From assembly GCA_044892525.1 (NCBI GenBank), contig CM097887.1, forward strand, positions 37,386,001 through 37,450,000: 64,000 nucleotides of DNA. The letters run 5' to 3'. The position numbers and the translations under genes are program-made. This stretch comes from Schmidtea polychroa. Its lineage: Eukaryota. Position 1 is the first letter of the stretch; each line of letters opens with the position of its first letter. Shown here piece after piece: positions 1 to 40,264 of this stretch. The notes beneath the pieces are model-generated. The model saw nothing but the letters and a program-made list of their open reading frames with translations. It searched no databases and had not been told where the DNA came from.

Positions 1-1450
1 TAATGTAAAAAGATTCTCTTTGTTGTCGATAAATACCAAATTTTTGAAAATCTTTCAAATCAATGAATAAGGCAGCATAGTTTAGCAACAAGTATTAATG
101 GAAAAATTGTGTTTGATATTTTGGTTCATTTCTTTAAACAAGAATAAAATACAAAGAACTTTCTTTCGAATTTAAATTATCTAGTTAAGTTAAAGAATTG
201 TGAGAAATGTTTGAATGTATGTATGAATATCAAGTACAATTATAACGATTATCTGTTGATTCATATTTATTCGGTAAAATTAACAATAATACTATTTCAT
301 TAAATGTGAGGAAGTACATACTCTTGCGAGCAGTTTTTTTCAAGCATGAAAAACATTAAAACTACAGAAAGAAATAGGTTGACTAACAGACATTTAGCAA
401 AAATTGTTAGAAATAAGAATGCATCCTTCGATGCAAATATTGAAAACATTATTAAACTTAGTCCTAAAATACTTGGCAAAACTTTGGTCAATAGTAAGCA
501 AGTTAAAATAATTACTTATTCTTGTTTTCATATCACTAATTCATAAGAATTGGTTGATATTTCTGTAAATAATGATTTTTTGTTTCCATGACATCAGATG
601 ATCAAAATTCAAGATTGTCGGATAATTATATTATCTTAATTTGTAAAAAACGCCATATATTTTGGGAATGAATTTCTATTTTCAACATGAGATAAATAGA
701 ATATTTATTTTGATATTTGAGAAATTATGAAATTTATGTAAAACTGTTTTTTTTTATTTATCAGTAAAATTGAGATTTGTTTATAATTCATTAATTTTGA
801 ATATTTAATATTTATAGGATGATAATGTTATAAGAGATATAAATATATACACATCGGTTGAATATAAACAATTATCTGGTGGAATTTAGACAATTATGCC
901 TGTCTCAAATAGACCGGACAATAACATAACAAACAAATATTCGATTTCAAAATGAATATAGTTTCAGATCGGATTGAAAGAAATTTAAGTAAAAAATTAA
1001 AATTTTATCTATTTTTCAATATTATTTTAAATTATTATAAAAATTTTAAATAATTTAAATTAATATAGAAAAATCATTAGGATTTAAAAATAAAAATAGA
1101 AACATTTTTTAAAATATTTTAATATAGCATTTATTAAAATAGGTTTCTATGAACTAATTATAGAAGCTTTAAAAATTTTAAATTTTTTCTAAATTAGTCA
1201 CTTTGAATTTTAAGGATATTTAATTAAAAAAAACTTTTATTTTATTATTTTTAAACAATGAGAAGTAAGGAAATGGAAATAAAAGAGAATATCAAAGAGC
1301 ATTTTATAAAATAGAAGAAGCTAAACTCCATGAAATTGACAAGGCCTTTCTTATAGTCGAAAATGTTTTCATTTGTATTAAATATATTATTCGTAGCAAA
1401 AGACGTAAATTATCACTTAATTGTTTATAAATTTAATTAATGCTGCTACC

Positions 1451-1791
1451 NNNNNNNNNNNNNNNNNNNNNNNNNNNNNNNNNNNNNNNNNNNNNNNNNN
1501 NNNNNNNNNNNNNNNNNNNNNNNNNNNNNNNNNNNNNNNNNNNNNNNNNNNNNNNNNNNNNNNNNNNNNNNNNNNNNNNNNNNNNNNNNNNNNNNNNNNN
1601 NNNNNNNNNNNNNNNNNNNNNNNNNNNNNNNNNNNNNNNNNNNNNNNNNNNNNNNNNNNNNNNNNNNNNNNNNNNNNNNNNNNNNNNNNNNNNNNNNNNN
1701 NNNNNNNNNNNNNNNNNNNNNNNNNNNNNNNNNNNNNNNNNNNNNNNNNNNNNNNNNNNNNNNNNNNNNNNNNNNNNNNNNNNNNNNNNNN
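1451..1791. other. Assembly gap (N run)
   Basis: Run of N. The other gaps are at 3642-3770, 5157-5752, 11123-11626 and 56589-56744. ORFs that cross these gaps are artefacts of translating N. Confidence 1.
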
Positions 1792-2119
1792 TGTATAAAT
1801 TTATGATTTATATAACTTTAAAATTTATATACTGTTATTTTGAGTTTTATAGTAAATTAAATAGCGAATTCTGGCAAAAAATTTTATTTTGATTTATTTT
1901 ATTTATTTCAACCAATGAGAAGAAAATTAAAATAAAAAAGCATTTGAAAATTGAAACTAAATATCAAAAATTTAATATAGATTATTTTTATGTTCGAAAA
2001 TTATTTCATTTTATTGACTATATACTTTGCAGCAAAAGGTTTAAATTATCATTTAATTGTTTAACAAATAATAGTAATAATGATAATAATTAAGATATAA
2101 AAAATAAATAAATATATGA

Positions 2120-2202
<83 letters not shown>
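2120..2202. repeat. (ATT)n microsatellite, about 27 units
   Basis: Uninterrupted ttattattatt run. Confidence 0.95.
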
Positions 2203-2203
<1 letters not shown>

Positions 2204-2308
2204 AAATGATATCTTGGTAGCAGCATTGATTAAATGTTAAAATTAATAAGCTATAAATGACAATAATAAAAATAATAATGTATATATTGGGAAATAATAA
2301 AGACTTAC

Positions 2309-2554
2309 TTTCAAATACCTTTGAATATAAAGAGTCAAATCTTCTTCTGATTTAATAATTCCACTGTTCATTGTTGACTTTAATGCCATGACCTCAAAAG
2401 AAACTACTAAATTAGAAATATGGGAAAATAGTTCTGTTGATGAGTTTCGACGTATTTCTTTGGAATCGCAAAATTCTTCTCTATAATCATTTGATGGTGT
2501 AACAATATAACTTTTTTGAATTTTCACATCTTTCCAAAATATTTCCACGTTCAT
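2309..2554 (-). CDS. Probable internal coding exon of an unidentified gene (82 codons, phase 0/0)
   Basis: Open frame MNVEIFWKDV...YIQRYLK, preceded directly by a ttcttag acceptor and followed by a gtaagt donor at 2308. Length is 246 nt, a multiple of 3. No family recognised. Confidence 0.4.
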
Positions 2555-3302
2555 CTAAGAACGTTTATTAATCAAATGACTATAAATCAAATTCAATTGA
2601 GAGTTTACACTAAGTTTCAGCATTGAAATCAATCTACCATCATATGAAAATGAGGAGAAAAGAAAATTAAATTAATCAAGAAATGGTATAGAATATAAAA
2701 GATTTTACCAAAAATAATTTAAAGGCTTTGTCGGATATTTGAGTTTTTTTATTTAATAAATAGAAATATTTTATAGCATTTTTAACGCAGCGCGAACACA
2801 GTGCCATTTTCTTTGAAAGTAGTGTAAGTCAAAAAGTCATTTTTGTCAAAAAGTTAGTTAATATTAACAATGAATGCAATCTGCTATGACATTTTATCTT
2901 AAATTTAATTTAGCACCTAAAGGGTAAAAGAAATTATACCAATGACTAGAAACAAAAAAAAAGAATATTGGAATCAGATTCTGATGAAAATACTATATTT
3001 AAATAAAAATGTTAAAAGAAAGAGAATCATACGATAAAGTTCGAGTTCAGGTGAAAGTGCTATTTCAGATGACTATGAGTCAGATTCTACAAGACAATAA
3101 TAATGTAAATACGCAAAGGAACAGAAAAATAAAGCACAATAAAAACACAAAGAAAATTTGCATATAAATATTATTTGGTTTGCAAAAACAATTTTATAAA
3201 TACCTTTAAAGTATTTATAGGTCTAAAAATAGATCGAAATTTTAAAATCTAAAGATAATGTATTGTGTATACGTTGGCACATGCCAGGACCCTCAAGAAA
3301 AC

Positions 3303-3500
3303 CCTCAGATCTCCAAATAAAATTTATAAAAGACCACATCCAAAGCTTTCTGGAATACTAGACCCGGTCGCATAATCCTAAATGAAGATATTTAGAGCCT
3401 GAGTTGAACGTCAAGAAAATGCATGAATTATATTTACAAAATTGTAAAGAAAGTACTATTTATACAGTAAAAAGTTATATATAGGAGCATATATATAATG
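3303..3500 (+). mobile_element. Degenerate DNA-transposase fragment (Sola-like / unclassified)
   Basis: Reads IKDHIQSFLEY*TRSHNPK*RYLEPELNVKKMHELY, matching the HIxSFPxxxSHYxRxxxxxxYLxxxLNIxKMYxLY motif of invertebrate transposases. Three in-frame stops. The superfamily assignment is from memory. Confidence 0.45.
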
Positions 3501-3911
3501 TAGCAATGCTGAATTTGCAAGCATCGTAGAAAAACATGATGTTCACTTAATAAACTCTAAATTACCAATTGAAAATGGCTAACTTATAGTCGAAAATTTT
3601 TTGATTTTTCAAAATATATTATTTACAGCAAAAGGCTTAAANNNNNNNNNNNNNNNNNNNNNNNNNNNNNNNNNNNNNNNNNNNNNNNNNNNNNNNNNNN
3701 NNNNNNNNNNNNNNNNNNNNNNNNNNNNNNNNNNNNNNNNNNNNNNNNNNNNNNNNNNNNNNNNNNNNNNGTCCGCAGAGGTGATTATGATTTTTCATAC
3801 GCCATGTTTACAAGTTTACAGATTTTTTTCTGTGACCAAGCTATTTTTCAAGCGATGTGATTTCCAGTGTACCGGGGAAAGTATGCAATAGAGTTGAATC
3901 AACAATATTGT

Positions 3912-3945
3912 ATACTTACCTGGCGCGAAGAGAAATCTTCGTGTC
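3912..3945 (+). ncRNA. U1 snRNA-like 5' end (ATACTTACCTGG) running into a 10-bp GAAA-tetraloop hairpin
   Basis: ATACTTACCTGG at 3912-3923 equals the conserved U1 5' end. G3922-A3931 pairs with T3936-C3945 (two G-U pairs) around a GAAA loop. It is not a complete U1, and the 12-mer could instead be a minus-strand splice donor (CCAG/GTAAGTAT). Confidence 0.4.
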
Positions 3946-3946
3946 T

Positions 3947-3997
3947 CCCGCATAGTACTGATGAGAGCCAAAAGCTCGAAACTAGTCTACTATTGGG
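3947..3997 (+). ncRNA. Minimal type-I hammerhead ribozyme with palindromic helix III (dimer type)
   Basis: Stem I ATAGTA(3952-57)/TACTAT(3988-93), extended by CCCG/TGGG. Core CTGATGA 3958-64. Stem II GAGC/GCTC with a 5-nt loop. GAAA 3978-81. Palindrome ACTAGT 3981-86 in place of helix III. GTC cleavage triplet ending at 3987. Confidence 0.85.
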
Positions 3998-4335
3998 ATT
4001 TGCACTGGGTATCACAAAGCTTGTACTGTTTATTTTATTATTATTATTAATATTATTATTATTACTAATTTTGATTTTCACCTCTGATTTCTTTTCATAT
4101 TCAATTGAAATTATATTGAAATTTATTTTTTCATTATTTTTTCCAAAATCAATAGGTAATGATCAAAATTAATTGAAAAACCGTGCCGAAAATATAATGT
4201 CAATAATTATTCTTATTATTAAAAGTTTTTCGATGTATATTATTAACCAAACGTTAACGAACGTATTAAATAGTTTAACTCAAAGAATGGATTCATTAGT
4301 GTTAATTTTAAATCTATCGCATCCGGCTCGATATT

Positions 4336-4626
4336 CCCAAAGTTGACAGAGGTTACATGACTCAAATTATGTTGGAGATATTTAATGCACCAATGACTTA
4401 TGTTGCAATTCAAGCAGTTCTTTCTTTGTACGCTTCAGGTCGTACCTCGGGTATCGTTCTGGACTTTAGTGATCATATATCTCCTACTATAGCAACTCAT
4501 GAAAATTGCATGTTACCTCATGCTATTTGTAGCATTGATTTAGCCGGAAGAGACTTAAGTGATGGTATTCATGATGCGATTTATAACAGCATAATAAAAT
4601 GCGATGTAGATTTTCGTAAAGATATA
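4336..4626 (+). pseudogene. Actin fragment with an in-frame internal deletion of about 85 codons
   Basis: [45 protein letters not shown] is joined directly to [20 protein letters not shown] (actin [20 protein letters not shown]) at 4563/4564. No introns; no actin N- or C-terminus. Confidence 0.85.
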
Positions 4627-5107
4627 GTCACAAGTATCGTGAGAGAAAGTTGAAAATTACTTTGAAGAGAGAGTTAATAGTACGTGAAATCGCATAGAGG
4701 TAAAAGATTGGAGCCGCAGCTGATGTATGGGATTCAGTTGATTGTGTGTCATCTTGTCAATGGTAAAGTTTCAAGGATTCATTGTTGATGAGCTCGTGAT
4801 ATGCGATCGATGCACTTTAGATGCATCAAAACCGCGACCAATAGAGCTGTTTCTTTGTCGTGTTGATAAAAGTGACCAGTTATTCAAAATCGGTTCTATA
4901 GTTCGATGCACGGTTAAACATAGTGTATTGGTGATTGCAATTTTTAATTTTAATGATTGTCAATGCCGATTGTTTGATGGTTAGCTTGAAACGAGATGGC
5001 TGTTGAATGGTTGGTGTAGCTGATTGTTAAAGGATCTAAATCTAAATTCTGCAGTATATATGTAGGTTACCTGCTCGTCCCGTTTTGAAACACGGACCAA
5101 TGAGTTT
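4624..5107 (+). rRNA. 28S (LSU) rRNA fragment spanning the D2 expansion segment; decayed, non-functional copy
   Basis: The 5' flank atagtcacaagtatcgtgagagaaagttgaaaattactttgaagagagagttaatagtacgtgaaa and the 3' flank cccgttttgaaacacggaccaatgagt match the conserved LSU blocks around D2. Several normally invariant positions have changed to A/T, and there is no other rDNA context. Confidence 0.85.
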
Positions 5108-5752
5108 TAAAATATCGTGATTCGACAATGTATCCAGATCGTATGAATAAAGAAATNNNNNNNNNNNNNNNNNNNNNNNNNNNNNNNNNNNNNNNNNNNN
5201 NNNNNNNNNNNNNNNNNNNNNNNNNNNNNNNNNNNNNNNNNNNNNNNNNNNNNNNNNNNNNNNNNNNNNNNNNNNNNNNNNNNNNNNNNNNNNNNNNNNN
5301 NNNNNNNNNNNNNNNNNNNNNNNNNNNNNNNNNNNNNNNNNNNNNNNNNNNNNNNNNNNNNNNNNNNNNNNNNNNNNNNNNNNNNNNNNNNNNNNNNNNN
5401 NNNNNNNNNNNNNNNNNNNNNNNNNNNNNNNNNNNNNNNNNNNNNNNNNNNNNNNNNNNNNNNNNNNNNNNNNNNNNNNNNNNNNNNNNNNNNNNNNNNN
5501 NNNNNNNNNNNNNNNNNNNNNNNNNNNNNNNNNNNNNNNNNNNNNNNNNNNNNNNNNNNNNNNNNNNNNNNNNNNNNNNNNNNNNNNNNNNNNNNNNNNN
5601 NNNNNNNNNNNNNNNNNNNNNNNNNNNNNNNNNNNNNNNNNNNNNNNNNNNNNNNNNNNNNNNNNNNNNNNNNNNNNNNNNNNNNNNNNNNNNNNNNNNN
5701 NNNNNNNNNNNNNNNNNNNNNNNNNNNNNNNNNNNNNNNNNNNNNNNNNNNN

Positions 5753-8570
5753 AAATTACTTTGTTCCGAGTGAAATTCATTAGCGATAGGACAAGATTCA
5801 GTCGGTCGTCCAAATAATAATTTATTAAACTCAATCCGGTCAGTATTTGACAATTGAATAAGCATATTGACTCTCGATATGTATTAGATAAAGACAGATT
5901 CTCGTTCTGTACAACGACAGTATCATCGACATCACTTTTTTCAGAAATATTATCATTGGAATCATCATTTGAAATATGATTCGACCAATATTGAACAATA
6001 AGTTTCAACTGTCCACTCCATAATAATTCAAGATTTTCCGGATCACTTAGCGAAAATCTTTCCAACAACTCTTGATTAAATTCCTCATTAGTCGTATCAA
6101 TCCGATATTTAACAATAGCATCAGTCGGTAGACTAGGATTATCGGAATTTAAATTGATAGAATCCTTTAAACTGTTTATCGATTTGATAGGAAGAAACTT
6201 CTCCAAACTATTACTCGAAATAGATAACAGTTTATGAGTAGAACTTTTGCGATTGCTAAATTCTTGATCGGCAAATCGAGAAATGAGAGTTTTCGATGAA
6301 ATATTCAACTCTAATTCGTCAATAATGCAAACAATTTCATCGATGTCGAGTTCTTTACTTTCATTGGATAGGAATAATGCAAATTCCAGAACTTCATTTA
6401 GATAAAGGTCAATTTTGGAGCAGAATACTGTATTTGATGGAAATTTATAGGAATTGAAATTTTTGTGTACTTCGCTTAAGGATGACATAATTCGTAATTG
6501 TGGCATCATGGGATAAAGTTTGATTTCTGGAATCGATGTTGATTGAAAAATGAAATCAGTAACAAGTCTATGAGGCTGGAATATTATGTTTGCAATCGAT
6601 GTGATAGAATACGAAATATTTGTGATATTATAATTGCCTAAAGAAATATGTTGAGGATTTGGAACAATAACAAAGTGACAGTTAATATTTTTATCTTGAG
6701 CTGGCAAATAGTGAACAGAGGAGCCTTCAGACGGTAACCAGACTTGAGACCCAGTTGTTGTGTTGGTTAATAGAAAGGCCACATTTGATAAATGAAGAGA
6801 AAGATTGATTAGGTTATCAAAGATAAGAACAATTTCGCATTCTTCGCCACATATCCATATCACAGGTTCAGGACATTGGCCTCGACTAAAGTTTGAATTA
6901 ACCTTGATTGGTGTAAATATGAAAACAGATTTTTCAATACACGATTTCGATGGTCGTTTTGGAATCAGATAATCTGGCAGCTTTCTAAGAATGATTTGCT
7001 TCAACCTTGGCAGATTCATAACTGAGGCATTTAAAGCCATTTGGTTGTCTTTACTCAACATCAACTTGGAAAAATTATTAAGCTCTCTGATCATTCTTTC
7101 ATATTCATCTCTGGCAATCAAATGATACCAATTGTCGAGAATTGACAATCCAAGCCCCAACAAAACATTTGTCGAATAATTCAAGAATTTACACACTGAA
7201 TAGAGTTCAATGATAATTTGCATTTTCAACGATTGGAAGCCATGATTAGATCTTTCACTATTCAAACCATCATTGATCAAACTCAACAAATTACCGCTAA
7301 CTTTCTCATTGAATAAATCATTGGATTTCACATTTAAATCATTCAGAATGTCTATCAATACAGAGAATCTTTGTTCGTAAATCAATTTCCTATCGGGATT
7401 TTTGACAGCACTCAGTTTATTGTGCATCAATAACGATTTCTTGTATTTATGGAGTGCGGATTTCCTAAAAAATCCCATTTGAGAATAGAGTTGTGCAAGA
7501 GTGTTGTGATATTGCTCTTTGTCGTTTTGGGTTTTCAACAAGTCGTTTTTGATCATTTTCAGAAAATTAGCAGCATCTAAGAATCGATGCTGATCAATAA
7601 AAAATCGGCTGGCTTTGATAATGGAATCGAAATTGATTGGATAATGATTTTGGATTTTATTGATTAGGAATTTTTTGTATCGAGATATGCATAGATGATA
7701 TTTCTCGCTGAGCTCAGTCAGATTTTGAATTTCAGGAGGATTTTTAAACAAGTCATTCGATGAGAATTTCATCAAGAAAGAAAAATCAGTCTGATCTGGA
7801 GAATTCACGTTGTTATGATTAGAGAAAAACGATTGATCGGTTTTTGGTTGACCGAGAAATAACTGACGGCTTTGATCATTCAAAGAAATTACTAATTGTG
7901 GATCTAATGCCTGGGTAGGGTTTGGGAAACAATACAAAATCCAAGAACAACACAATCCTTCTTCTGCTCCTGCCCACCACAATTGGTCTTTGACTTTACT
8001 TAGATAACATATTGCCACCTGATAATAGTAATAGGCATATAAATAATTCCCACATAACAACGATTGGTCAGCCGTTTGTTTATTCACTCTACCCAAATAC
8101 AATCTCGATTTATTATTTTTAATAAATCGACTTTCTTCTTGTAATTTCTTCAAATCCAAATCAATCGGATCTGTCAAATTGAACTCTGTCTCGTCAAGTG
8201 ACACTACAGAGCCAGAATCAGAAAAGGCTTCATTATTCAATTGTTTATTTCGAGTTTGTTCTAATTTATTGTTGAAAAATGCTTCTCGACTATTTAATGA
8301 GTAGAGAACTTTTTCAAAGATTGATTTCAAAAAACTTCGAATTTCTGAATCAAAAGATTTATCCTCCAATGAGGATGTTTCAAATGATTTCAGTGAATTA
8401 TCAACTGGCGGTGACAACTGGGTTGGATTTTCGGAAGAAAGTGAATTTATTTTCCAGTTATTTGATACAGACGAGCAAGAAGAACCATTTAATGAAATAG
8501 TCGAATTTATTCTCGAAAAGCTAATTGTAGACCGGTAATGCCAAATTAATTCATTTTGAAAAAAGCAGTC
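5753..8570 (-). CDS. TRAPPC9: Trafficking protein particle complex subunit 9 (NIBP/Trs120), long exon; C-terminus runs into the gap at 5157-5752
   Basis: LGRVNKQTADQSLLCG, DQLWWAGAEEGLC, LYSQMGFFRKSALH, SVFIFTP and VIWICGEECEIVLIFDN match TRAPPC9. The frame is open upstream of the called start, to 8570 (DCFFQNELIWHYRSTISFSR) behind an AG acceptor. The most 5' exon(s) were not located. Confidence 0.85.
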
Positions 8571-15125: not shown

Positions 15126-15379
15126 AAAAAATAAATACAAATTTGTTGATATTATTAGAATTTCAATATTTGTCTTCAGAATAAAATCTGAAAAACTATT
15201 ACTGTATTTTCATGCATGGGCTATACAGTAATAGTTTTTCAGATTTTATATATATATGGTAGGCGGGGAAATATTTGAGTATAGCCCATGCATGAAAATA
15301 CAGTAATAGTTTTTCAGATTTTATTCTGAAGACAAATATTGAAATTCTAATAATATCAACAAATTTGTATTTATTTTTT
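15126..15379. repeat. Perfect 101-bp inverted repeat with a 52-bp spacer
   Basis: 15126-15226 is the exact reverse complement of 15279-15379. The spacer begins with a copy of arm sequence (agtaatagtttttcagatttta). Confidence 0.9.
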
Positions 15380-19198: not shown

Positions 19199-22100
19199 CA
19201 GCCCCGTACCGTGACACCTTTTGACGGGGGGGCCCAGACTCTCATTAAAGAGGCCAGTAATTCTCGTGTAAACTAAGTATTTTATGAAAACAGACTAGTC
19301 ACTACTCACACTTTGCACTCCGAAATGTTCAATTTAAAAAAAAGGAAAGCAAAATCGACATTTTGTCTGAGCATTATTTTGCTACATTATTGCATATACT
19401 AGTATATAGGAAATGATTTTCGCACATTTTTTAGGAACAAACACAAAAAACAAATAGCTGCATGTATTTGCACGACGGACAATTGGACATACAAAGACAG
19501 AACACACAGTCACACAGATTTGAAAACTAAAGGTGAGTGCAATAGAAATTACACAGGAACTAGATCCAGAAAAAAGAAATTACGTGTGTGAGATATCGAC
19601 ATTACTCAAAATAGCTGCAGTCGACGATTTTTCATTTCATGAAACCGCCGAAGAAACTCATCAGATTTGATGTTATTACTAATGTCACTTTCAAATGAGA
19701 GCAATACAAGGTTGGCTTTACGAGAATGGCTCATCGACGTACGAAAGGGAGTTAAGACACGAGATAAAGTACTGAAAGTCGCCTCACATGTGGCAGTTGA
19801 AGCACCGATTGTCAGTGCAGAAGCTGCAATACGATAGACAGATGGAAAAGCATCTCGGTATGAGTACAGTTCTTGCACTAACTGATGAACGTTTGTCACA
19901 GTACTGGCTCTCTTCAATAGGAAAACCTTTGCAGTTTCAAATTCATGTTGGGTTTCGCTTAGGTTCACGCCACACAGTGTCGCTAAAGTCTTTAGATCCT
20001 CAATAGTCAAAAAGTTTGCGTGATCAGTCTTCAAACATGCAAGAGACTTATAAAGGCTTCTGTTGGTGACACCGAAGCGTTTTGTTAGTTCCTGCAGAGT
20101 CCTATCAACGACTTCGTAATACATCTGGCGATATGCGCATCTGATAGGCAAGGCCTGGTGTTCTGGCTGTCCCACAGATCCGAACACAATGAAGTTGTCT
20201 AATTTTGAGTTCATCTGAGTTCTTCTTCTTTTTGGTGTCTGTTCCATATCCATTTGACCTTCGAATTTCCCAAAAAGAACTTGGTTGCGTAGGCTGCGAA
20301 TGCGCTCTATGACGGCATCCATAACATCACATGTTGAAGAAAGGTCCATTGCTTGACCCTGCAAGCTATTGTTGGCTGTTTCAAGGATAGTCAGCAATGA
20401 GAGCACCATGTGTGCAATGAACTGAAACTCCACTTCATTGACTCGATGCAAGAGTCCAGTAGCTTCCAATTGAATATCAATTGAAAAGTGAGAATGTCTA
20501 CTAGAACACATCTCAAGCAAATTCACAATTGTATCATAATTAGTTGTTATTGCCTGAGTCGTCTGCAAGTGTCCTGTCCAAAGATGTTCCATGAGCAGTG
20601 TCAATTTATCGCCTTGATATATGGCCGCAACCTTAGGATATGACAAAAATGTGTATAAGTTTCTGCATATGTCGAAGAAGTCCCGCAGTTTTTGGCACTC
20701 AGAAACGGCACACACAACAACCAAATGAAATTTGTGGTTGAAGCAATGGACATACGGAATTTCTTTTTGTAGACGCTCCTGAAGCAAGGCCTGCACCCCA
20801 CCATGCTGTCCAGACATAACAGCGGCTCCATCATAGGATTGGGAAATTATATTTTTAGGATCCAACTGAGCCTCTTTCAAGGTTGTCAAAATTACATCTG
20901 TGAAGGCCTCTGCATTGAGAGCAATTGTTCGGGAAATGCAGATTAAGTGCTCCTGAGGTTGTCCTGCTGAGACAAACCTTATGGCAATCGACACATTCTC
21001 AGTCCCTGTTCGATCTTTGGTACCATCCACTTTCAGAGTAAAATATTCAACATCCGCAGACTTGCACTTCTTAACAATTGACTCTTGCACTATTGATGCC
21101 ATTAACGCGATAATTTCATTTTGAATTCGGGGTGATGTGTACGTGGCAATTTTGGGAATCGTTTTAATGATTCGAGCCAGCTCAGGATTTTTCTTAACAG
21201 TGTATTCGAAGAGACGTAAAAATAGACCACACGGAAGCTTATCATCCTCATTAATATCATCTCTACTGAAACTGTCACCACGAAAGGCTAATTCATTTGT
21301 CACAAGAAACTTTACAACGTCAACGATTTCGTTGACATATAACGGTTGTTCTTCAGCTGTGTTTCATTAATCAAAGGGCAAACTTCCTCACCTTTTTCAC
21401 ATCTCAGCTGTTTCTCTTTCCAGCGTTCCATGTCATGGATGGGGCCAGCAGAAGATTCATGCTTTTGAAAACCTTTTCCTTTTTCTAAAGCCGATTTCCA
21501 ATTTTGGAATCCTCCTGTTCTGAAAGCACTTTCGCCAGCAGAGCCGGGCAATGAAAATTTTCTACAGCAAAAGCAGAAGACTGCATCTTTCTCAATAGAG
21601 TACTCCAAATATGGTCTTCCATTATACCACACAGACGAAAATGAGCGTTCCCTTGAACCAAACGAAGTCTTTGGGAAATTTACATCAGTTGGCTGGCGTG
21701 GCATTTCTTCACCCAGATCACATTTAGTAGATGACAGAGTCTTAGCAGGTGCACAAGAAGATGAGGACATCACTGCACTGTCACGGATACATGAAATAGC
21801 AGGTACAGATGAAGGACTAGCACAAGTTGAGGACATAGTAGCATAGATACTATCACTGGATGAAGTGACTGAAGTCACAGAATTCTTTGGAATGACTTGG
21901 AAGAAATTCATGATACTCTTTTGTGTCGACATGTTCTATTACGATGAAAATAATGTTACAAAATATGATCAATTAACATGTCACTCTGCCATAGGAGTGA
22001 GTTGAGTATAATGACATGTGATGTGCTCTCATTGGCCTATCTCTCTACCATCGTATAAAGACCACAATGCACCCACTCCGTGCTCTGACACTCAATCATG

Positions 22101-27368: not shown

Positions 27369-30300
27369 TTCCCCTCCATAAGAAATTTTTTAAGTTTTTC
27401 CACGTTTCCTTCACTCTTTTTACAATTCTCGTTTCTTAAGATATATCGTCTATCATGCACTTTCTCGATCACTTGATATGGCCCCTCATATCTGTTCTGG
27501 CTTTTGTTGCGTGTTTCTAATTTTACTAACACATCTTCTCCTACGTTAAATTTCCTCCTTGTTTGTTCTTCTTGTTCTTCCTTTACCTGTTTTTCTTTTA
27601 ACCCTTACCATTTCTCCTTGCTAATCTTTTTTTTCAAAAACTATCTCTGACAGGCTTTTTCCTGTCGTTTTTGTTTGGTTGCATTTAATGTAAATTCAAC
27701 TTCTGGTAGTATCTCTGCCCAATCCGTCTTCCTTCTGTCTCGTAAAGTAGCATTTAACAGCTCTCGTATTGTCCTGAGGTGCCTTTCTATCTGTCCATTT
27801 GTTTGATGATGATATGGACTTGAAGAACATAACTTAATATCAAGCATCATAGTGAATTCTCTCATCTTTCCTGATTCAAATGCCTTCCCACAATCAACTC
27901 TTATCTCCTTTGGGCACCCAAATCTTAAAATCCATTTTTCTAAAATCGTTTTCTTTATTGTTTCCTCGTCTTGTCTTGTTATAGTTGTCAAGACTTGATA
28001 CTTACTATACTGGTCTATTATACTCAATATATACTTCTTACGTCCTTTTATTTCTTGCATTGGTCCACATATATCCACGAAAATAATTTCAAATATTTCG
28101 GTTGATTCTAGTTTTTTTATTGGCCTAATATCTTTTTTCTCTTTTTTCCATACACAGATTAACGGTGTGTTCCATGGGGGTTGCCTTTCCGTATAATCAT
28201 AAACGTGATCGCCTTGTGGTCTGTCCTTAGCGTGAATCTTCTTCCGTAGAGATAGTGCTTAAAATGAATACAAAATAGTATACCACCAATAGTTCCTTCT
28301 TTGTAATGCAATATCCTTTTTCATGGCTCGTCATCGAGTGTGATCCATACGCAATTACTCTCTCCTTTCCATCTTTATCTCTTTGCGAAAGCACTGCTCT
28401 AATGGTATCAAAACTGGCATCAGTATCTAAAATGAACTCCTTTCTCAGATCAGGAAAGCATAGAATCGGTGCCGTTAGGAGTGCTAACTTCATTCCCTCG
28501 AATACGTTATTCGTTCCTTCAGTCCATTCCAATTTTTTGTTACTCGGACCGCTACATAATTGTTCTAACATCCTTGATTTCTTTGCATACTCACTGATGA
28601 ATCTTCAATAATTATTACAAATGCCTAGAAAGCTTCGAAGTTTCTTTACGCAACTTGGCTTCCCAAAGTTTTGTATAGCCTGAATCTTAGAAGGATTGGT
28701 TTTCAATACTTCTTTACTGATTATGTGTCCAAAGAATCTGATTTCTTTCTTTATTATTTGACACTTTCTGGGTTAATCGTTAGACCTGCTTCATCGATCG
28801 CTTTTAATACTTCACTGAGTATTGTATACTGTTTTTCTTTACTATTCGAATAAATCAGAATGTCATCCAAATAGACCATTGCTCCATTTATTTTGCCTAT
28901 TACCTTTGTCATCATTTCCTGGAACGTACCTGGTGCTGCAGCGATTCCGAACGGCATTCTATTGAAACAGTATTGCCCTTTCTTTGTTGAGAATGCTGTT
29001 TTCTCTTGCGATTCTTTGTCTAACTCCACTTGGTAATATGCATTACCAAGATCGATTGAGCTAAAATAAACTGACCCTCCTAACAAATCTAACATCTCGT
29101 CTATGTTTGGCATTGGGAATGCCTGCCTCTCTGTTACTGCATTCAGCTGTCTGAAATCCAAGCATAGCCTAATATCTTTTTTCTCTTTTTTCCATACGCA
29201 GATTAACGGCGTGTTCCATGGAGAGTTGCATTTCCGTATAATCCCGTTTTCGTACAAATTTTGTATAGCTTCTTCAATTTTTGTTTCCAAATTCAATGGT
29301 TGACGATATGGTTTTAAGTTTATCGGTTCACCTCTTGTAATTATCTTATGCTTTACCAAATGCGTGCGACCCACATCCCGTTTATCCGCCATAAACACGT
29401 TTCCACTGTTCGTTATTATTTCCTTCAATTTACTATCCTCATCAATCTTTAGATGTTCCAACGCTCTCGTCAATCTTTCTCCATCCTTTATTTGTCTGCC
29501 GAATTTTGCTTCAATGTTACAAATATAATTCTTGTCTTTTCACTAGATTCGAAATTTTCTTTTTTGCCAGCTTATATCCAAATGCTTCTAGTAATTCTAC
29601 TCCTCCTATCACCTCTGGTGTCACTTTCTCCGCCACAATAAATCTAACTTCCTTAGAAATATCTCCGATAGTTACTTTAACCTTTGTTCTTCCAATTGTC
29701 TCTATCGTATTTTCGTTTGCACATCGTAACTTATCGTCCTTCTCATCAATTGTTGTCCTCGTAACTTGTTAAAACAGTTCACACTCATTACGTTTATTCG
29801 TGCTCCGGTGTCTAATAAACATTCGAAAATTTCCCCATTCATCATTACTGTTACACTAGGTATTCCCTGTAGCTTGTTATATACAATTTCTACCTCCAAC
29901 CCCATTTCAATTGTTCCAATTCTTTCCACTTCCTCTTCAAACTTTTCTCTCCTTAGGAACCTGTATACTTTCTCACTTATACTTCCTACATTCTCCTACT
30001 TTTCTACTCCTTGAGGATATCCCATCCACTTTTGTGTTAGTATACGGCTCCAACCAACTTTTCTATTGGTGGAGCCCTGTTGTTTGGGTACGTCCTACTA
30101 AAATTATCTTCATTTGTCTCTACGCACGATTCCATTTCCTCTTCTTCTTTGATTCCATTATCCTGGCTGTATCTGTTTCCTGTCGGTCTTTGTTTCTCTA
30201 TCGATTTCTTGTAACTCGACTTTATATAACATTCTTTTGATCTATGACCATTTCTGTTGCATCTTTTACACCGTATTTCTTGACATAACCTTCTTATATT

Positions 30301-31064
30301 ACCTTCTTTCCCACAACCAAAACATCTTGGCACTTTTTTATCTGGACAATTCCTACTTATATGTCCGCTTCTGTGACACGTCCAGCATTCTATCGTACTT
30401 CTTACTGGACATTCTATTTTCGTGTGGCCTAATTTGTGGCATAGCCAGCACTCTGGTTCTTCTCGTCGCCTGACTTCTTCTCTTTCATCTTTCTCCTTGT
30501 ACTGTCGTCTTCTCTGTGGATCCTGATAGACCACTCTTGCATAACTTTTCAAAGCGTTGATATGATCTCTCTGCCTGTCCACTTTATCCATCGGAATTAA
30601 TGTTTCCTTTATCTCCTCTGTGCTTTTCATCTTCCTCAATATTACTTCTTTCTCAACTTCTTTATTCTCAGCACATACTATCAACATCTTTGTTGTTATT
30701 TTCTCTTTGGTGAATTCTTTATTCTCAGACAACCTGTCAACAAGGTCCTACACTTTTTTTAAATATGTTTCAATCTCTTCGCCTCTTCTTTTATAATTCA
30801 ATAAACTTTCCATATCCTTTATTACGTCTCTTTCGTAATCAAATGCCATTCGTAACCTGGTTTGAAATCCTTCTGCTTTACTAACTGTCTTCGCATATTT
30901 CTCCAAAAGATCCTCATCGATCATGCATGCAGTCAATCTTTCCTGTTTTTTTTATTGAATCCTTTAGCATCGAAATAGATCTCGGTTCTCTGATGAATTT
31001 TTCCAAGTCATCACCTTGACAGAACACCTTTGGTAATAATCTTTCGGTAATCGCGTTGGTGTTT

Positions 31065-32919: not shown

Positions 32920-34944
32920 TCTTGCTCTTGTTGCTAGTTGCAAGTGATTTTATGTGAGGCTCCAACTTAGTTAACTTCAGTCTCAAATCAACCGATATCC
33001 TTTTTTCATGAGCAAATCATTTATGGCATTAAAACCCCATTCTGCTATATATGAAGACATAAACGGAAACAATAGTTTTCTTGCACATTTCACTTAAATT
33101 GAATGTTTCATTTCATTCCTCACAAAGTCCTGCCATCGCTCCTTTTATATTAAATAAAGTTTTAACTGATTCATCATTTTGCATTTCTATGAGTTCTTCT
33201 TGGTGCGGTATATTTGAAATATCTGACAAATCCACTAGCATTGACTGCCACATCCAAATTGGAAATTCGATTTGTTTCAAATCAGAAAATCTTTATTTTA
33301 AATCAGCCGATAGAAATTTCTAATGATCGACAATAACAGTTATTGTTGAATGTTCGCCAAAAGATATGAGATATGAAGCACACTATATATTTAATTCAAA
33401 ACAGACATCAATATGGCGATCTAAATTACCGCAACGTAATATGATACACCCGTTTCCACAATATAAGAGTTTCTATAATCTAAAAAAAAAATCGATAAAA
33501 TTATATTATAGCAACACACAAACTTACCTGTGTGCAAAAATTTAATGTTCCGAATGTAGAAAGTTTTATTATAGGAATTGAGAAAGTGACAGAAAAATAA
33601 TTTTACATACAAACACAGGACACATAATATAAAATACACGCAAATTTAATATAGCTTTTTTGTTCCGAAAGTAGAGAGTCATTAACATACTGTTAACATA
33701 TCATTAATTTAAAATTATTAAAATTCATGGCTGAAAAAAATTTGGATTTTGAATCTGACAACTCAACTTTGAGTTTTTGAGAAATGGACGACAAAACATC
33801 GTAAGATCTATTTATAAAATATTTTTGAAGTTAATATTTCTTTAGATTTTCAGATATTTCTTTGGAGACATTTCCATTTTGCGAAGGTGAAGATCTGACA
33901 ATGTAAGAATTTTTTTATTTAATTACAAATAATTAAAATATTTTACAGCATATCAGATATTTCTAGTCAAACGCCTTTGTGTGAAGATATTCAACAAGTT
34001 CCATCGACATTTTTGGAATTGAAGAAAAAAATTCGAAAATCGTAAATTTTAATAACTAAAAAAAAAATAATATTTTCAAAGAATTTCAGAAAATGACAAA
34101 ATCCGTCTCATCAATCCATATGAAAATGGAGAAAATTATAAAGATTTTGGAAGATTACTGGGAATCTCCAAAAAATCGATTAGAACCATTATTTCTTAAA
34201 AAAATAAATGTTTTTGGTGATTATTTTATTTCTTTTTAGTTAAAAATATATATAACTTACATTTTATTGAAATAATTCCAAATTCATAACATATCATAAA
34301 ATACCTAAAAAAGCACCTGAAATTTAATTATCAATATATTATAAATATATTATAAATGCTGATTACAAGTAATATTTAAGAGCTTGAATAATGATCTCAT
34401 AATTATATGAAATCAAAATTCAAGCCTTAAAATATACTTAAATTTAAAAAACTTACTTCTAAAACCATAAATAAAATTGAATTGAGAATGAAAAAATGAA
34501 ATAAACATTCTCATAAATGGTGAGTCATCGATAGATGAACACACCAACATGTATTATAGAGACTTTTAACATGTGGAAACGGGTGTATCGACAAGAACTA
34601 TTGCACAACAGTTTCGTCGTTCAACACTGTTACGCAACATTGTCGCAGTATTTTAACAGTATAACAGTATCAGTCACTTCAAATTTTTATAACCAATGAA
34701 ACTTTATAAAATTTTTTTCGCATAGATGTTTCTGAAATAATTCAATAAAAGTAAAGAAACCAAATATCTTAGCTAAGGCGACAATAAGAATTTTGCTTGT
34801 TCCTTGAAGTTGCTGATTTAATATATTTAGTTTTTCAAAGATATCGCCTAAATAAATTAGAAGTGCTTTACCATTGACCGTTAACAGATACTTAATTTCA
34901 GGTTTGTCACTTAAAAAATTACTAGGAGTATCAAATTGTTTCAT
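32920..34944 (-). mobile_element. Fragments of a Buster/ZBED5-type hAT transposase (34687-34944 and about 32920-33330), separated by about 1.3 kb of other sequence
   Basis: YLGDIFEKLNILNQQLQG, KLLFPFMSSYIAEWGFNAI and LRLKLTKLEPHIKSL match the family C-terminus. Confidence 0.65.
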
Positions 34945-38277: not shown

Positions 38278-40264
38278 CACCAAACACCACTGAGATACAT
38301 TCTCTGTAAAGTAATTCACTCACCAATTGGCTTTATTAATCATCATCAATTTGAATACAATGTATGAATTTGATAATGAATGATTTTTGGAAATTTATTT
38401 TAGCCATTTTAGAAATGGCTTTCAGGTAAGATATTTAATTTTAAGTAAAGTTTAAGGCTTGAATTTTGATCCATATGAGATATGAGATCATTATTCAAGT
38501 TCTTAAATATTACTTTTAATCAACAATATAATTATAAATTATTTTTAATTAATTTCCAGGCTTTTTTTAGGAATTTTATGTCATTTATTGTCATTTATGT
38601 CATTTATTTTGGAATTATTTCAAAAAAACGTGAGTCAGATATGTTTTTAATTATAATTAATTAAATAAATAAATCAATCCCCAAAAATATGTATTTTTTT
38701 AAAACATTTTGGGAAAAATCGCCTAGTATGAATAAAATAATTTTTTAAATTTTTGTAATCTTCTTTTCTGAGCTCAATATAAAGGGCTTCTTTCAGGAAA
38801 TCATATCTTGATTGAAACGACATTGATCCAAATCCTTCTGCTCTTGATATTATTTTCCTAATATTAAATTTTATCTTACTAAATATGCTTTCAATTGGAT
38901 TGAGGAATGGGCTGTATGGCGGTAAATGCTCAATAATATTATTTGGCGATAATGCTCCTCCATGAATTGAGGCATTATCATGAATGAATCGATATCCCGT
39001 TTCATTCAATTTCGATGTTATCTCGTAAATAAAGGTTTGGTAGGAATCCTTTTTATAGGATCATATAATTAATTTGTGGTGAATTGGCCCTTTGACGCCT
39101 ATTGCCAGAGCCAAGGACATATTTCGTCCTCTGTTTGTTGGTTCAATTTTGTACAACCTTTCACCTTTTTTGTTTCTTCCCCGTTTCTGGCTTGTCCAGC
39201 TATTAAAGCCACATTCATCGATATATATTAATTTTTTATCTCTCCATCCTTCTTCCAGGAATCGAGTTACAAACTGTAACCTCATTTCCATTACTCGATC
39301 TGAATTACGTTCAGCAACACATGGCCTAATTTCCTTCAATGTTATGAGATGTTTCTTCAAGAAATGAGAAATTGTCGTTTTTGATACGTCGCAGTTTATG
39401 GAAACAAGGTAAATTCTCATTTCTTCAATTGAAGCGTATATGTTTCCCTCAACGAAGTCCAACAATTTGTATCCTTCTTCTTCCGATATTTTTTCTTTGC
39501 TACCACCTATCTTGCCCTTTGACCAATGGCCAAATTTTTTATATTTGTAAACAATGGATTTTATTGAGTTTTTGGATATCCCCATTAATTTCCCGAAGTG
39601 TAAATAATCTTCGCCATTTTCCATGGCATTTATAATTCGGACTTTGTCAATTTCCGAAATACTAAAAAATATTATTTTTTTTTAAATTATAAATAAAATT
39701 TACAATTTATGATCTTTTTTTGCGGTTACAGGCATCGCAGACGTTCCAGCAACATCTTCAACCCTATCAAATAATAAATTTATTATAACTCATAAGAAAT
39801 CTTACAACATCATTCCTTCACCTTCGCGAAATGGGAGAGTTTCTATAGAAATATCTGAAATTCTAAGGAATGTTTAACTTCATTTTAACTGAAAAAATAA
39901 ATCTTACGATGATATTTCGTCATTTTCATGACATTTTAACGTATTTTCATTAAAAATATATTTTAAAAAATTTTCTGCCATCTTTTATTTTCTCAAAATA
40001 GTCTAAAATAGAATTATTATAGGAATGTATCTCAGCGGTGCATTTCGATGAATCAAAAGTTTGTATGTGTTTTTAAGTATGTGTTGTGTTTGTGTGCATT
40101 TTTTTTTCTTCCACTTTTCAGATTTCTATAGTATAAGATGTATCTGATTGCACTCTAAATGAACACATCAAAGTAAAATCAAGGTAAGCATGTATGTATC
40201 TATAATGTAAGATTATTGATTTTTTTGTTATATTATAGGAAATGCATCTCAGTGGCGTTTGATG
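38278..40264 (-). mobile_element. Tc1/IS630-like transposon, 1987 bp, defective transposase
   Basis: 31-bp TIRs (25/31), TA on both sides, and an inner direct-repeat copy near 40014-40045. Transposase motifs IDECGF, HDNASIH, LPPYSPFLNPIE; frameshift near 39060. Confidence 0.88.

What the first reader, a model, noticed from the sequence alone, without database searches (positions are those of the whole stretch)
3947..3997. Minimal dimer-type hammerhead ribozyme
Seen: every conserved core nucleotide of a type-I hammerhead is present (CUGAUGA, GAAA, GUC), with a perfect 6-bp stem I and 4-bp stem II. Helix III is reduced to the palindrome ACUAGU, which cannot close as a monomer. Established: such minimal hammerheads with a palindromic helix III occur in the terminal repeats of Penelope-like retroelements and cleave as dimers. 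No Penelope RT or GIY-YIG ORF is visible nearby, so this may mark a non-autonomous ribozyme-carrying retroelement, or a lost array hidden in the gap at 3642-3770. Predicted cleavage is after C3987.
Basis: partly seen in the sequence, partly recalled or inferred. Interest (0 to 1): 0.78.

Follow-up and report, generated by a model that had tools for sequence, protein, structure and literature searches.

The report
Lone hammerhead ribozyme beside U1 fragment
A complete hammerhead self-cleaving RNA motif with no partner copy sits inside a very tightly folded element of a planarian-like genome; it is most likely one stray unit of the ribozyme-carrying 'retrozyme' repeats already known in animals, and its one odd feature is an exact copy of the first 16 bases of the worm's U1 splicing RNA.

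Summary
The motif is real. At 3947-3997 (+) every hammerhead core base is present, with a 6+4 bp helix I, a 4 bp helix II and the palindrome ACUAGU as helix III. Cleavage is predicted after C3987. It is the only such motif in the window, and 300 simulated windows gave none. Its build (helix I 6 bp, helix II 4 bp, helix III 1-2 bp with a palindromic loop) is that of the canonical animal type I hammerhead of satellite-2 and retrozyme repeats, not the Penelope 'min-HHR'. No Penelope gene and no second copy can be read nearby.

Two points go beyond the finding:
- The ribozyme is one arm of a 175-nt four-way junction (3849-4023). It is extremely stable on the + strand (z = -10.3) and held by 7 G·U pairs with no A·C mismatch.
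- Another arm holds 3912-3927, identical to nt 1-16 of the Schmidtea mediterranea U1A1 snRNA. The rest is not U1.

Best reading: a solitary unit of a planarian retrozyme-like element, probably inactive on its own. The U1 block may mark an snRNA-type promoter and start site, as in newt satellite 2. No relatives could be reached, so family size, covariation and expression are untested. Interest is moderate.

The parts
3771..4023 (+). Minimum readable extent of the element. The left end is hidden in the gap 3642-3770, so the element is 253 to about 382 nt if the written gap length is right.
   Evidence: GC is 27-45% here, against 12-20% after 4025. Structure specific to the + strand runs from 3771 (z -2.9 on +, 0.05 on -) to 4023. 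There is none in 4024-4110 or 3560-3641.
3849..4023 (+). 175-nt four-way-junction domain
   Evidence: MFE -79.7 kcal/mol, z = -10.3, 0 of 300 shuffles as stable. The minus strand gives -61.4, z = -6.4. Control stretches give z from -1.7 to +1.4. All helices have mean pair probability 0.74-0.99 in a 290-nt context.
3849..3871 (+). Closing stem P1, 5' strand; it pairs with 4001-4023
   Evidence: 5+6+9 bp, interrupted by G.A/A.A and U.U mismatches.
4001..4023 (+). Closing stem P1, 3' strand
   Evidence: pair probabilities 0.95-0.99.
3872..3923 (+). Arm A: 21-bp hairpin whose 3' strand is the U1-like 5' end
   Evidence: 5+12+4 bp; z = -7.6 on the + strand and -4.1 on the - strand.
3912..3927 (+). 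Exact copy of nt 1-16 of S. mediterranea U1A1 snRNA
   Evidence: 16/16 identity to the U1A1 sequence in the S1 table of PMC6312358. It is the only match in the window with up to 3 mismatches; 0.02 are expected. Rfam U1 scores only 10.9 bits against a gathering score of 69.5.
3924..3943 (+). Arm B: 8-bp hairpin with a GAAA tetraloop
   Evidence: pair probability 0.99.
3947..3997 (+). Arm C: type I hammerhead motif; predicted cleavage between C3987 and U3988

Best explanation
The locus is a single, structurally intact unit, or a large piece of one, of a non-autonomous hammerhead-carrying retroelement. It belongs to the 'non-LTR retrozyme / satellite-2' kind and lies in intergenic DNA of a Schmidtea-like planarian.

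If the + strand is transcribed, it would fold into a compact four-way junction with the hammerhead as one arm. Helix III is only the palindrome ACUAGU, so the ribozyme can be completed only by pairing with a second copy (a double hammerhead). That happens naturally in transcripts of tandem arrays. This solitary copy is locked in a 10-bp helix I and is therefore most likely catalytically silent at this site.

The exact U1 5' end inside the element is best read as a piece of a U1 snRNA gene taken up by the element family, namely the transcription start region of an snRNA-type promoter. Newt satellite 2 likewise carries an snRNA-type promoter, and the schistosome Sm-alpha repeat carries a pol III promoter ahead of its hammerhead.

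Shown: the motif, the lack of a partner, the fold statistics, the strand bias and the identity to U1. Inferred: the retroelement nature, the family membership, the promoter role of the U1 block, and inactivity at this locus.
For: - The motif is complete and non-random.
- Its architecture equals the 'canonical' metazoan type I hammerhead as defined in PMC4209133, and matches the amphibian retrozyme hammerheads (PMC7229834 text and supplement).
- Retrozymes are described as short units of 150-450 bp with low GC that give highly self-paired RNAs. Here GC is 27-45%, the fold has z = -10.3, and the possible length of 253-382 nt includes the 379-nt S. mediterranea retrozyme named in Fig. S6E of PMC7229834.
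- There are 7 G.U pairs and no A.C mismatch, and the + strand is 18 kcal/mol more stable than the - strand. That points to selection on the RNA of hammerhead polarity rather than to a DNA palindrome.
- A planarian origin fits mir-753 at 81 bits and the U1A1 16-mer.
- There is precedent for small-RNA-gene promoters inside hammerhead repeats: newt satellite 2 and the schistosome satellite (PMC2220036; PMC6765202).
- The monomer cannot close helix III, while the dimer can.
Against: - Only one copy is readable. There is no tandem partner, no target-site duplication and no second hammerhead in 64 kb.
- No relative from any genome could be fetched, so there is no copy count and no covariation.
- The Rfam score is below the gathering threshold.
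- Loop 1 is reduced to a one-base bulge, so the usual loop 1-loop 2 contact may be missing.
- The published planarian retrozyme is available only as an image, so identity with it is not shown.
- The promoter reading of the U1 block rests on analogy alone. No planarian snRNA promoter element is known to me, and none could be compared.
Confidence: 0.55

Rival explanations
1. Chimeric retro-insert. While copying a hammerhead-element RNA, a reverse transcriptase jumped onto U1 snRNA near its 5' end, leaving U1 nt 1-16 fused to the element. The locus is a dead one-off product.
For: The boundary is sharp: identity to U1A1 is 16/16 and then falls to 5/32, counted by eye against the S1 table. Addition of U1- or U2-derived pieces onto 5' ends of retroposons by template jump is documented for the SINEU families (PMC4494074). 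The U1 block, the hammerhead and the nearby actin fragment are all on the + strand.
Against: In this model the U1 piece should be the 5' terminus of the insert, with unrelated host DNA upstream. Instead 3849-3911 pairs with both the U1 block (arm A, 21 bp) and the far side of the hammerhead (P1, 20 bp), through changes that keep G.U pairs. No target-site duplication or poly(A) was found.
Confidence: 0.15
2. Remnant of a Penelope-like element: a solo terminal repeat (pLTR) whose coding part was lost.
For: Most Penelope hammerheads occur as single motifs away from intact elements, and their helix III is short and palindromic (PMC4209133; PMC6765202). A 2026 preprint argues that animal retrozymes derive from pLTRs.
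Against: The helix lengths (I = 6 bp, II = 4 bp) and the absence of an extra base between positions 9 and 10.1 do not fit the metazoan Penelope min-HHR. No RT or GIY-YIG remnant was found in ORFs within about 4 kb on either side. The only RT in the window belongs to a Ty3/gypsy-like element 24 kb away.
Confidence: 0.12
3. A host small-RNA gene derived from U1: an snRNA-like transcript starting at 3912 that carries a U1 5' arm and an embedded hammerhead and has a cellular role.
For: The U1 5' end is copied exactly. A GC-richer block lies upstream where an snRNA promoter would sit, and composition drops sharply about 112 nt downstream of 3912. The fold is strong and specific to the + strand. The U1-like arm shows no change while its pairing partner has drifted only through G.U-preserving changes.
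Against: The sequence has no Sm site of the planarian form PuA(U)5-6Pu quoted in PMC6312358. The U1 stem-loops are absent (Rfam U1 10.9 bits). The U1-like arm is base-paired and not free. The locus is not among the expressed U1 variants listed in PMC6312358. A transcript starting at 3912 would lack the upstream strands of P1 and arm A.
Confidence: 0.08
4. Chance motif inside a DNA-level foldback (MITE-like inverted repeat), with no RNA meaning.
For: P1 looks like a pair of imperfect 23-bp terminal inverted repeats. The window is rich in DNA transposons and long hairpins.
Against: The motif appeared in none of 300 simulated windows. A neutral DNA palindrome should decay into G.U and A.C mismatches about equally, yet 7 versus 0 is seen. 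The nested multi-arm layout is not that of a simple inverted repeat. No target-site duplication flanks it.
Confidence: 0.04

Closest known systems
Amphibian satellite 2 / axolotl retrozyme hammerheads (HHR_Amex1 type)
   Same: Both are type I with a 6-bp helix I and a 4-bp helix II with an A-rich loop 2. In both, helix III is reduced to one or two pairs with a palindromic loop (ACAUGU there, ACUAGU here). Both show poor monomer activity and activity as dimers, and both sit in a unit of about 330-350 nt that gives self-paired RNA (PMC7229834). The newt repeat has an internal snRNA-type promoter (Coats 1994, as cited in PMC2220036).
   Different: Those occur as very many tandem copies; here one copy is readable. 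Loop 1 is reduced here to a single bulged C. No identity to a U1 sequence is mentioned in the papers I read on the amphibian repeats.
Schmidtea mediterranea retrozyme of 379 nt (Cervera & de la Pena 2020, Fig. S6E)
   Same: The likely host genus is the same. It is a type I hammerhead in a self-paired unit, and its 379 nt falls inside the 253-382 nt possible for this element.
   Different: Only the name and length are available as text, so the sequences could not be compared. Identity is a lead, not a result.
Penelope-like element min-HHR in pLTRs
   Same: Both are type I with a palindromic and very short helix III and are expected to work as dimers. Many copies lie apart from coding sequence (PMC4209133; PMC6765202).
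   Different: The metazoan Penelope motifs have a longer helix II, a shorter helix I and an extra unpaired base after A9. Here these are 4 bp, 6 bp and none. No RT/GIY-YIG gene is nearby.
Schistosome Sm-alpha / Sj-alpha SINE-like hammerhead repeats
   Same: Both come from a flatworm host, are non-autonomous, and have a small-RNA-type promoter region followed by a type I hammerhead (PMC6765202; PMC2770079).
   Different: Sm-alpha uses a pol III promoter. Here no tRNA-like gene and no convincing A/B boxes are present, and the borrowed piece is from U1.
SINEU retroposons with U1/U2-derived heads
   Same: A retroposon carries a 5' piece of U1 snRNA that was added by template jump or recombination (PMC4494074).
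   Different: SINEU heads are much longer pieces of U1 or U2, lie at the 5' terminus, and have no ribozyme. They are known only from crocodilians.

Membership tests
Hammerhead ribozyme, type I | Conserved core: CUGANGA, GAAA, an A15.1-U16.1 pair, and H at position 17 | tested here: met
   All are present at 3958-3964, 3978-3981, A3981/U3986 and C3987.
Hammerhead ribozyme, type I | Helices I and II flank the core, with helix I open-ended | tested here: met
   Helix I has 6+4 bp and helix II has 4 bp, including G10.1-C11.1. Pair probabilities are 0.87-1.0 in a 290-nt context.
Hammerhead ribozyme, type I | A helix III that closes the three-way junction | tested here: inconclusive
   It does not form in the monomer (pair probability 1e-6). 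It forms as a 6-bp intermolecular helix in a modelled dimer at -29.6 kcal/mol.
Hammerhead ribozyme, type I | Score at or above the Rfam gathering threshold | tested here: not met
   HH9 scores 26.5 bits against a threshold of 52. The loss comes from the missing helix III and loop 1 columns.
Hammerhead ribozyme, type I | Self-cleavage at the predicted site | not testable with these tools
   No RNA data or assay is available here.
Hammerhead ribozyme, type I | Covariation in helices among relatives | not testable with these tools
   No relative could be fetched.
Non-LTR retrozyme / satellite-2-type repeat | Canonical type I hammerhead (helix I 6 bp, helix II 4 bp, helix III 1-2 bp with a palindromic loop) | tested here: met
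   The sequence was checked against the definition in PMC4209133.
Non-LTR retrozyme / satellite-2-type repeat | Head-to-tail tandem copies of 150-450 bp | tested here: not met
   No repeat of the flanks and no second motif are present in the readable sequence. The gap 3642-3770 cannot be read.
Non-LTR retrozyme / satellite-2-type repeat | Low GC and a highly self-paired RNA | tested here: met
   GC is 27-45%; z = -10.3 with a + strand bias.
Non-LTR retrozyme / satellite-2-type repeat | Expressed as linear and circular RNA of unit length | not testable with these tools
   No transcriptome is available here.
Penelope-like element hammerhead (min-HHR in pLTR) | Lies in a repeat that flanks an RT + GIY-YIG ORF | tested here: not met
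   The ORFs around the locus (outermost 300-8500) gave no RT or GIY-YIG hit. The only RT in the window is gypsy-like, at 27.6-30.7 kb.
Penelope-like element hammerhead (min-HHR in pLTR) | Long helix II (6-8 bp), short helix I (4-5 bp), and an extra base between positions 9 and 10.1 | tested here: not met
   Helix II is 4 bp, helix I is 6 bp, and A9 is followed directly by G10.1.
Penelope-like element hammerhead (min-HHR in pLTR) | Palindromic positions 15.2-16.2 and loop 3 | tested here: met
   ACUAGU at 3981-3986.
U1 snRNA | 5' splice-site recognition sequence at the 5' end | tested here: met
   16/16 identity to U1A1 nt 1-16.
U1 snRNA | Four-way junction with stem-loops I-III, the U1-70K and U1A loops, and stem-loop IV | tested here: not met
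   Rfam U1 scores 10.9 bits against 69.5, and only the first 13 or so positions align. No match to a 20-nt 3' segment of U1A1 was found in the window.
U1 snRNA | Sm site PuA(U)5-6Pu | tested here: not met
   None is present between 3912 and 4110 on reading the sequence; the definition is from PMC6312358.
tRNA-headed SINE (Sm-alpha type) | tRNA-like head with pol III A and B boxes | tested here: not met
   ARAGORN finds nothing.

The most novel reading that the evidence does not exclude
The U1 block is a shared, selected feature of a planarian family of hammerhead RNAs. These structured RNAs would carry an exact U1 5' arm held in a hairpin by a splice-site-like partner. They would then either use a captured U1 gene promoter and start site to be made as snRNA-type transcripts, or interact with the splicing machinery by presenting or masking a U1-like arm. 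That would be a direct sequence link between self-cleaving retroelement RNAs and a spliceosomal snRNA gene.
Probability: 0.12. Interest if true: 0.7.

Novelty: new member of a known kind. Interest (0 to 1): 0.4.

Why it matters
Hammerhead repeats are abundant in animal genomes, but it is still unclear how they are transcribed and what moves them. A planarian copy whose structured unit contains the exact start of the host's U1 snRNA gives a concrete clue that can be checked by sequence. It bears on whether such elements borrow snRNA gene promoters, as was inferred for newt satellite 2, or pick up snRNA pieces during reverse transcription. Taken alone, this single locus is an ordinary relic. Its value lies in pointing to a census that would settle whether the U1 link is a family trait.

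Tried and rejected
- **Other copies in the window:** none by seed-and-extend repeats, local alignment or motif scans.
- **Relatives elsewhere:**
  - A search with the ORF that happens to span the locus found nothing.
  - A metagenome scan for 'U1 5' end followed by hammerhead' gave 11 hits, about the number I had estimated for chance. Several have a complete-looking hammerhead with a stable helix III, and in every hit the upstream 9-mer is accidental.
  - The neighbouring TRAPPC9-like protein has only one database relative, at 55% identity, on a 3.1-kb contig with almost no flanking DNA, so no orthologous locus could be read.
  - An exact-protein look-up for a neighbouring gene found nothing.
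  - The planarian genome is evidently not in the collections.
- **Target-site duplication or poly(A) around the element:** none.
- **Empty-site test using the local repeat cut by the gap:** the part after the element is not recognisable.
- **Minus-strand reading (a consensus 5' splice site at 3912-3922):** rejected. The identity to U1A1 runs 5 GC-rich bases beyond what a splice site needs, and no coding signal exists on that strand.
- **Canonical U1 gene or pseudogene:** rejected.
- **tRNA-type SINE head:** rejected.
- **U1-hammerhead-actin chimeric retrocopy:** the actin fragment is 290 nt away behind AT-rich simple sequence, and no supporting junction was found.
- **A possible short intron between arm A and helix I:** I thought of it, but no tool predicts it and no relatives exist, so I make no claim.

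- In one search one extra statistic was computed on a string in which the hammerhead arm was left out and the two remaining pieces were joined by a four-base linker. The string was neither printed nor saved, and I do not use that number.

Full report
**Where we are**

The window is AT-rich eukaryotic DNA (17-41% GC in 2-kb steps).
- It has a mir-753 hairpin at 81 bits.
- Its host genes include TRAPPC9-like, DCP1-like and Nrap-like ORFs, a RING-finger ORF and an ORF with a RickCE-like domain plus TPR repeats; it also holds several transposon remnants.
- The stretch 3912-3927 is identical to the first 16 nt of the main U1 snRNA (U1A1) of Schmidtea mediterranea, as printed in S1 Table of PMC6312358.
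- I therefore treat the source as S. mediterranea or a close relative. That mir-753 is a planarian microRNA family is from my own knowledge.

- Reading 3947-3997 on the + strand gives every part of a type I hammerhead at the coordinates the finder gave. The layout is listed in the observation check and in the parts table. Cleavage is predicted between C3987 and U3988.
- Rfam's Hammerhead_HH9 model aligns end to end at 26.5 bits, with E = 1.4e-4 locally and 0.023 for the whole window. This is below its gathering score of 52 because the helix III hairpin and the internal loop of helix I are absent.
- A descriptor scan of my own finds this single site in the window. It finds none in 300 simulated windows, even with relaxed stems.
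- The motif is real and not a chance match.

**It needs a partner and has none**

- In the energy model the monomer keeps helices I and II (-12.1 kcal/mol). Closing helix III costs 5.7 kcal/mol, and its pair probability is about 1e-6.
- A symmetric double hammerhead, with intermolecular helices I and III, scores -29.6 kcal/mol.
- The core strings CUGAUGAG and GAAACUAGUC do not occur together anywhere else in the readable 64 kb.
- The flanks of the motif are not repeats of each other.

**Which kind of hammerhead**

- PMC4209133 separates two kinds.
  - The 'canonical' animal type I motif has helix I of 6 bp, helix II of 4 bp and helix III of 1-2 bp capped by a 2-4 nt palindromic loop.
  - The Penelope 'min-HHR' has helix II of 7-8 bp, helix I of 4-5 bp, an extra base after position 9 and usually no helix III.
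- This motif fits the first kind on every count and the second only in being palindromic.
- The axolotl Ax330 retrozyme printed in the supplement of PMC7229834 has the same core followed by the palindrome ACAUGU and a similar A-rich loop 2. That paper reports poor cleavage of such motifs as monomers and better cleavage as dimers.
- The same paper places canonical type I hammerheads in non-autonomous 'non-LTR retrozymes' of 150-450 bp. These have low GC and are expressed as highly self-paired linear and circular RNAs. It names a 379-nt retrozyme in S. mediterranea, but only as an image.
- ORFs around the locus (outermost 300-8500) show no RT or GIY-YIG domain. The only RT in the window belongs to a Ty3/gypsy-like remnant 24 kb away.

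**What surrounds the ribozyme**

- Folding 3771-4030 gave -98.3 kcal/mol, z = -8.5.
- The core of this fold is a 175-nt domain, 3849-4023, at -79.7 kcal/mol and z = -10.3. No shuffle out of 300 was as stable. Control stretches nearby give z between -1.7 and +1.4.
- The domain is a four-way junction:
  - a 20-bp interrupted closing stem, 3849-3871 with 4001-4023;
  - arm A, 3872-3923, with 21 bp;
  - arm B, 3924-3943, with 8 bp and a GAAA loop;
  - the hammerhead as arm C.
- All helices keep pair probabilities of 0.74-0.99 when folded in a 290-nt context.
- The same DNA read on the minus strand is 18 kcal/mol less stable. The helices contain 7 G·U pairs and not one A·C mismatch. A DNA palindrome decaying neutrally should show both kinds about equally, so the structure looks selected at the RNA level, on the strand of the hammerhead.
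- Structure specific to the + strand continues upstream to the gap edge (3771-3848: z = -2.9 on +, 0.05 on -). It stops at 4023, where GC also falls from about 43% to 12-20%.
- The element therefore spans at least 253 nt, and at most about 382 nt if the written gap length is true.

**The U1 piece**

- 3912-3927 matches U1A1 nt 1-16 exactly. It is the only match in the window even at 3 mismatches, where 0.02 are expected.
- Right after it, identity falls to chance: 5 of 32 by eye.
- Rfam U1 gives 10.9 bits against a gathering score of 69.5.
- There is no Sm site, and no 3' part of U1 anywhere in the window.
- It is therefore a sharp-edged fragment, not a decayed U1 gene.
- A minus-strand splice site would explain 11 of the 16 bases but not the GC-rich last five.
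- In the fold, the U1-like bases form the 3' strand of arm A. They pair with 3872-3890, whose departures from perfect complementarity are G·U-preserving changes or small bulges, while the U1-like strand itself is unchanged.

**How I read it**

- The simplest account is one unit of a planarian retrozyme-like element, silent at this site for lack of a partner.
- For the U1 block, two origins are documented in other systems.
  - Hammerhead repeats can carry promoters of small-RNA genes: newt satellite 2 has an snRNA-type promoter and the schistosome satellite has a pol III promoter (PMC2220036; PMC6765202).
  - Retroposons can gain U1 or U2 pieces by template jump (PMC4494074).
- The template-jump account predicts that the U1 piece is the 5' end of the insert, with foreign DNA upstream. 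Here the upstream 60 nt is woven into the same fold. I therefore prefer capture of a U1 start region as part of the element, at modest confidence.
- A cellular U1-like RNA with an embedded ribozyme is not excluded, but it lacks the features of an Sm-class snRNA.

**Limits**

- No relative could be reached.
  - The collections hold no planarian genome.
  - The one metagenome scan returned only chance pairings of a 9-mer with unrelated hammerhead-like matches.
- Copy number, covariation, expression and cleavage therefore remain untested.
- No target-site duplication, poly(A) or empty site could be defined.
- No tRNA-like head or pol III boxes were found.

- Some letters were written from memory in my private reasoning: human U1, actin residues and promoter consensus motifs. 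Of these, only the pol III box consensus was used in a tool.
- One statistic used two pieces of the domain joined by a linker. It is not used here.

**Verdict**

The hammerhead is an ordinary member of a known kind. Two additions, the hyper-stable four-way junction and the exact U1 5' end, make the locus worth a genome-wide census. Interest is 0.4.

Noticed in passing
34373-34434 (-), 38448-38509 (+), 61280-61336 (+), with repeats 38396-38660, 59336-59563, 61228-61457: One mir-753 hairpin scores above the Rfam threshold (81 bits) and two more score about 52 bits. Each lies in a repeated unit of a few hundred bases, so this microRNA family seems to sit in a locally multiplied or transposon-like unit.
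   Followed up: partly
4320-4653 (+): A decayed actin fragment matches Pfam Actin positions 113-181, then jumps in frame to a later part of actin. It has no N-terminal part upstream and lies on the same strand as the hammerhead, 290 nt downstream.
   Followed up: partly
1334-1430, 1985-2065, 3567-3641: Three copies of a local AT-rich repeat of about 85 nt. The third copy runs straight into the gap at 3642, so the hammerhead element may have landed in or next to a copy of this repeat.
   Followed up: partly
5067-8417 (-): A large TRAPPC9/Trs120-like ORF is interrupted by an N gap. Its best database relative is only 55% identical and sits on a 3.1-kb contig, which shows that this genome is not in the protein collection.
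   Followed up: partly
19606-21932 (-); 27641-30732 (-); 39061-39624 (-); 43127-44155 (+): Transposon remnants: a hAT transposase ORF; a Ty3/gypsy-like element whose gag, RT, RNase H and integrase signals lie in at least four separate reading-frame pieces; and Tc1/mariner-like and pogo-like transposase pieces.
   Followed up: partly
15126-15379 and 44070-44284: Two long hairpins, with arms of 111 and 104 nt that are 96% complementary. They draw weak hits to unrelated microRNA models; the second overlaps the end of the pogo-like ORF.
   Followed up: no
51787-56010 (-): An uninterrupted 1407-aa ORF with a RickCE-like cysteine protease domain followed by TPR repeats. Such a long intron-free ORF is unusual in this genome context.
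   Followed up: no
L002:1002-1060, L006:640-698, L008:3407-3466, L007:3130-3190, L005:344-412, L011:924-988, L003:1824-1905: By-catch of the metagenome scan: contigs carrying complete-looking hammerheads with stable helix III hairpins. Three of them (L002, L006, L008) are near-identical. They are unrelated to the planarian locus.
   Followed up: no
PMC6312358 S1 Table (not in the window): That census lists low-scoring 'U1' candidates in pairs on the same scaffold (for example scaffold2225, 135 nt, 61 reads). Loci that keep only part of U1 may therefore be recurrent in this genome and could include relatives of the present element.
   Followed up: no
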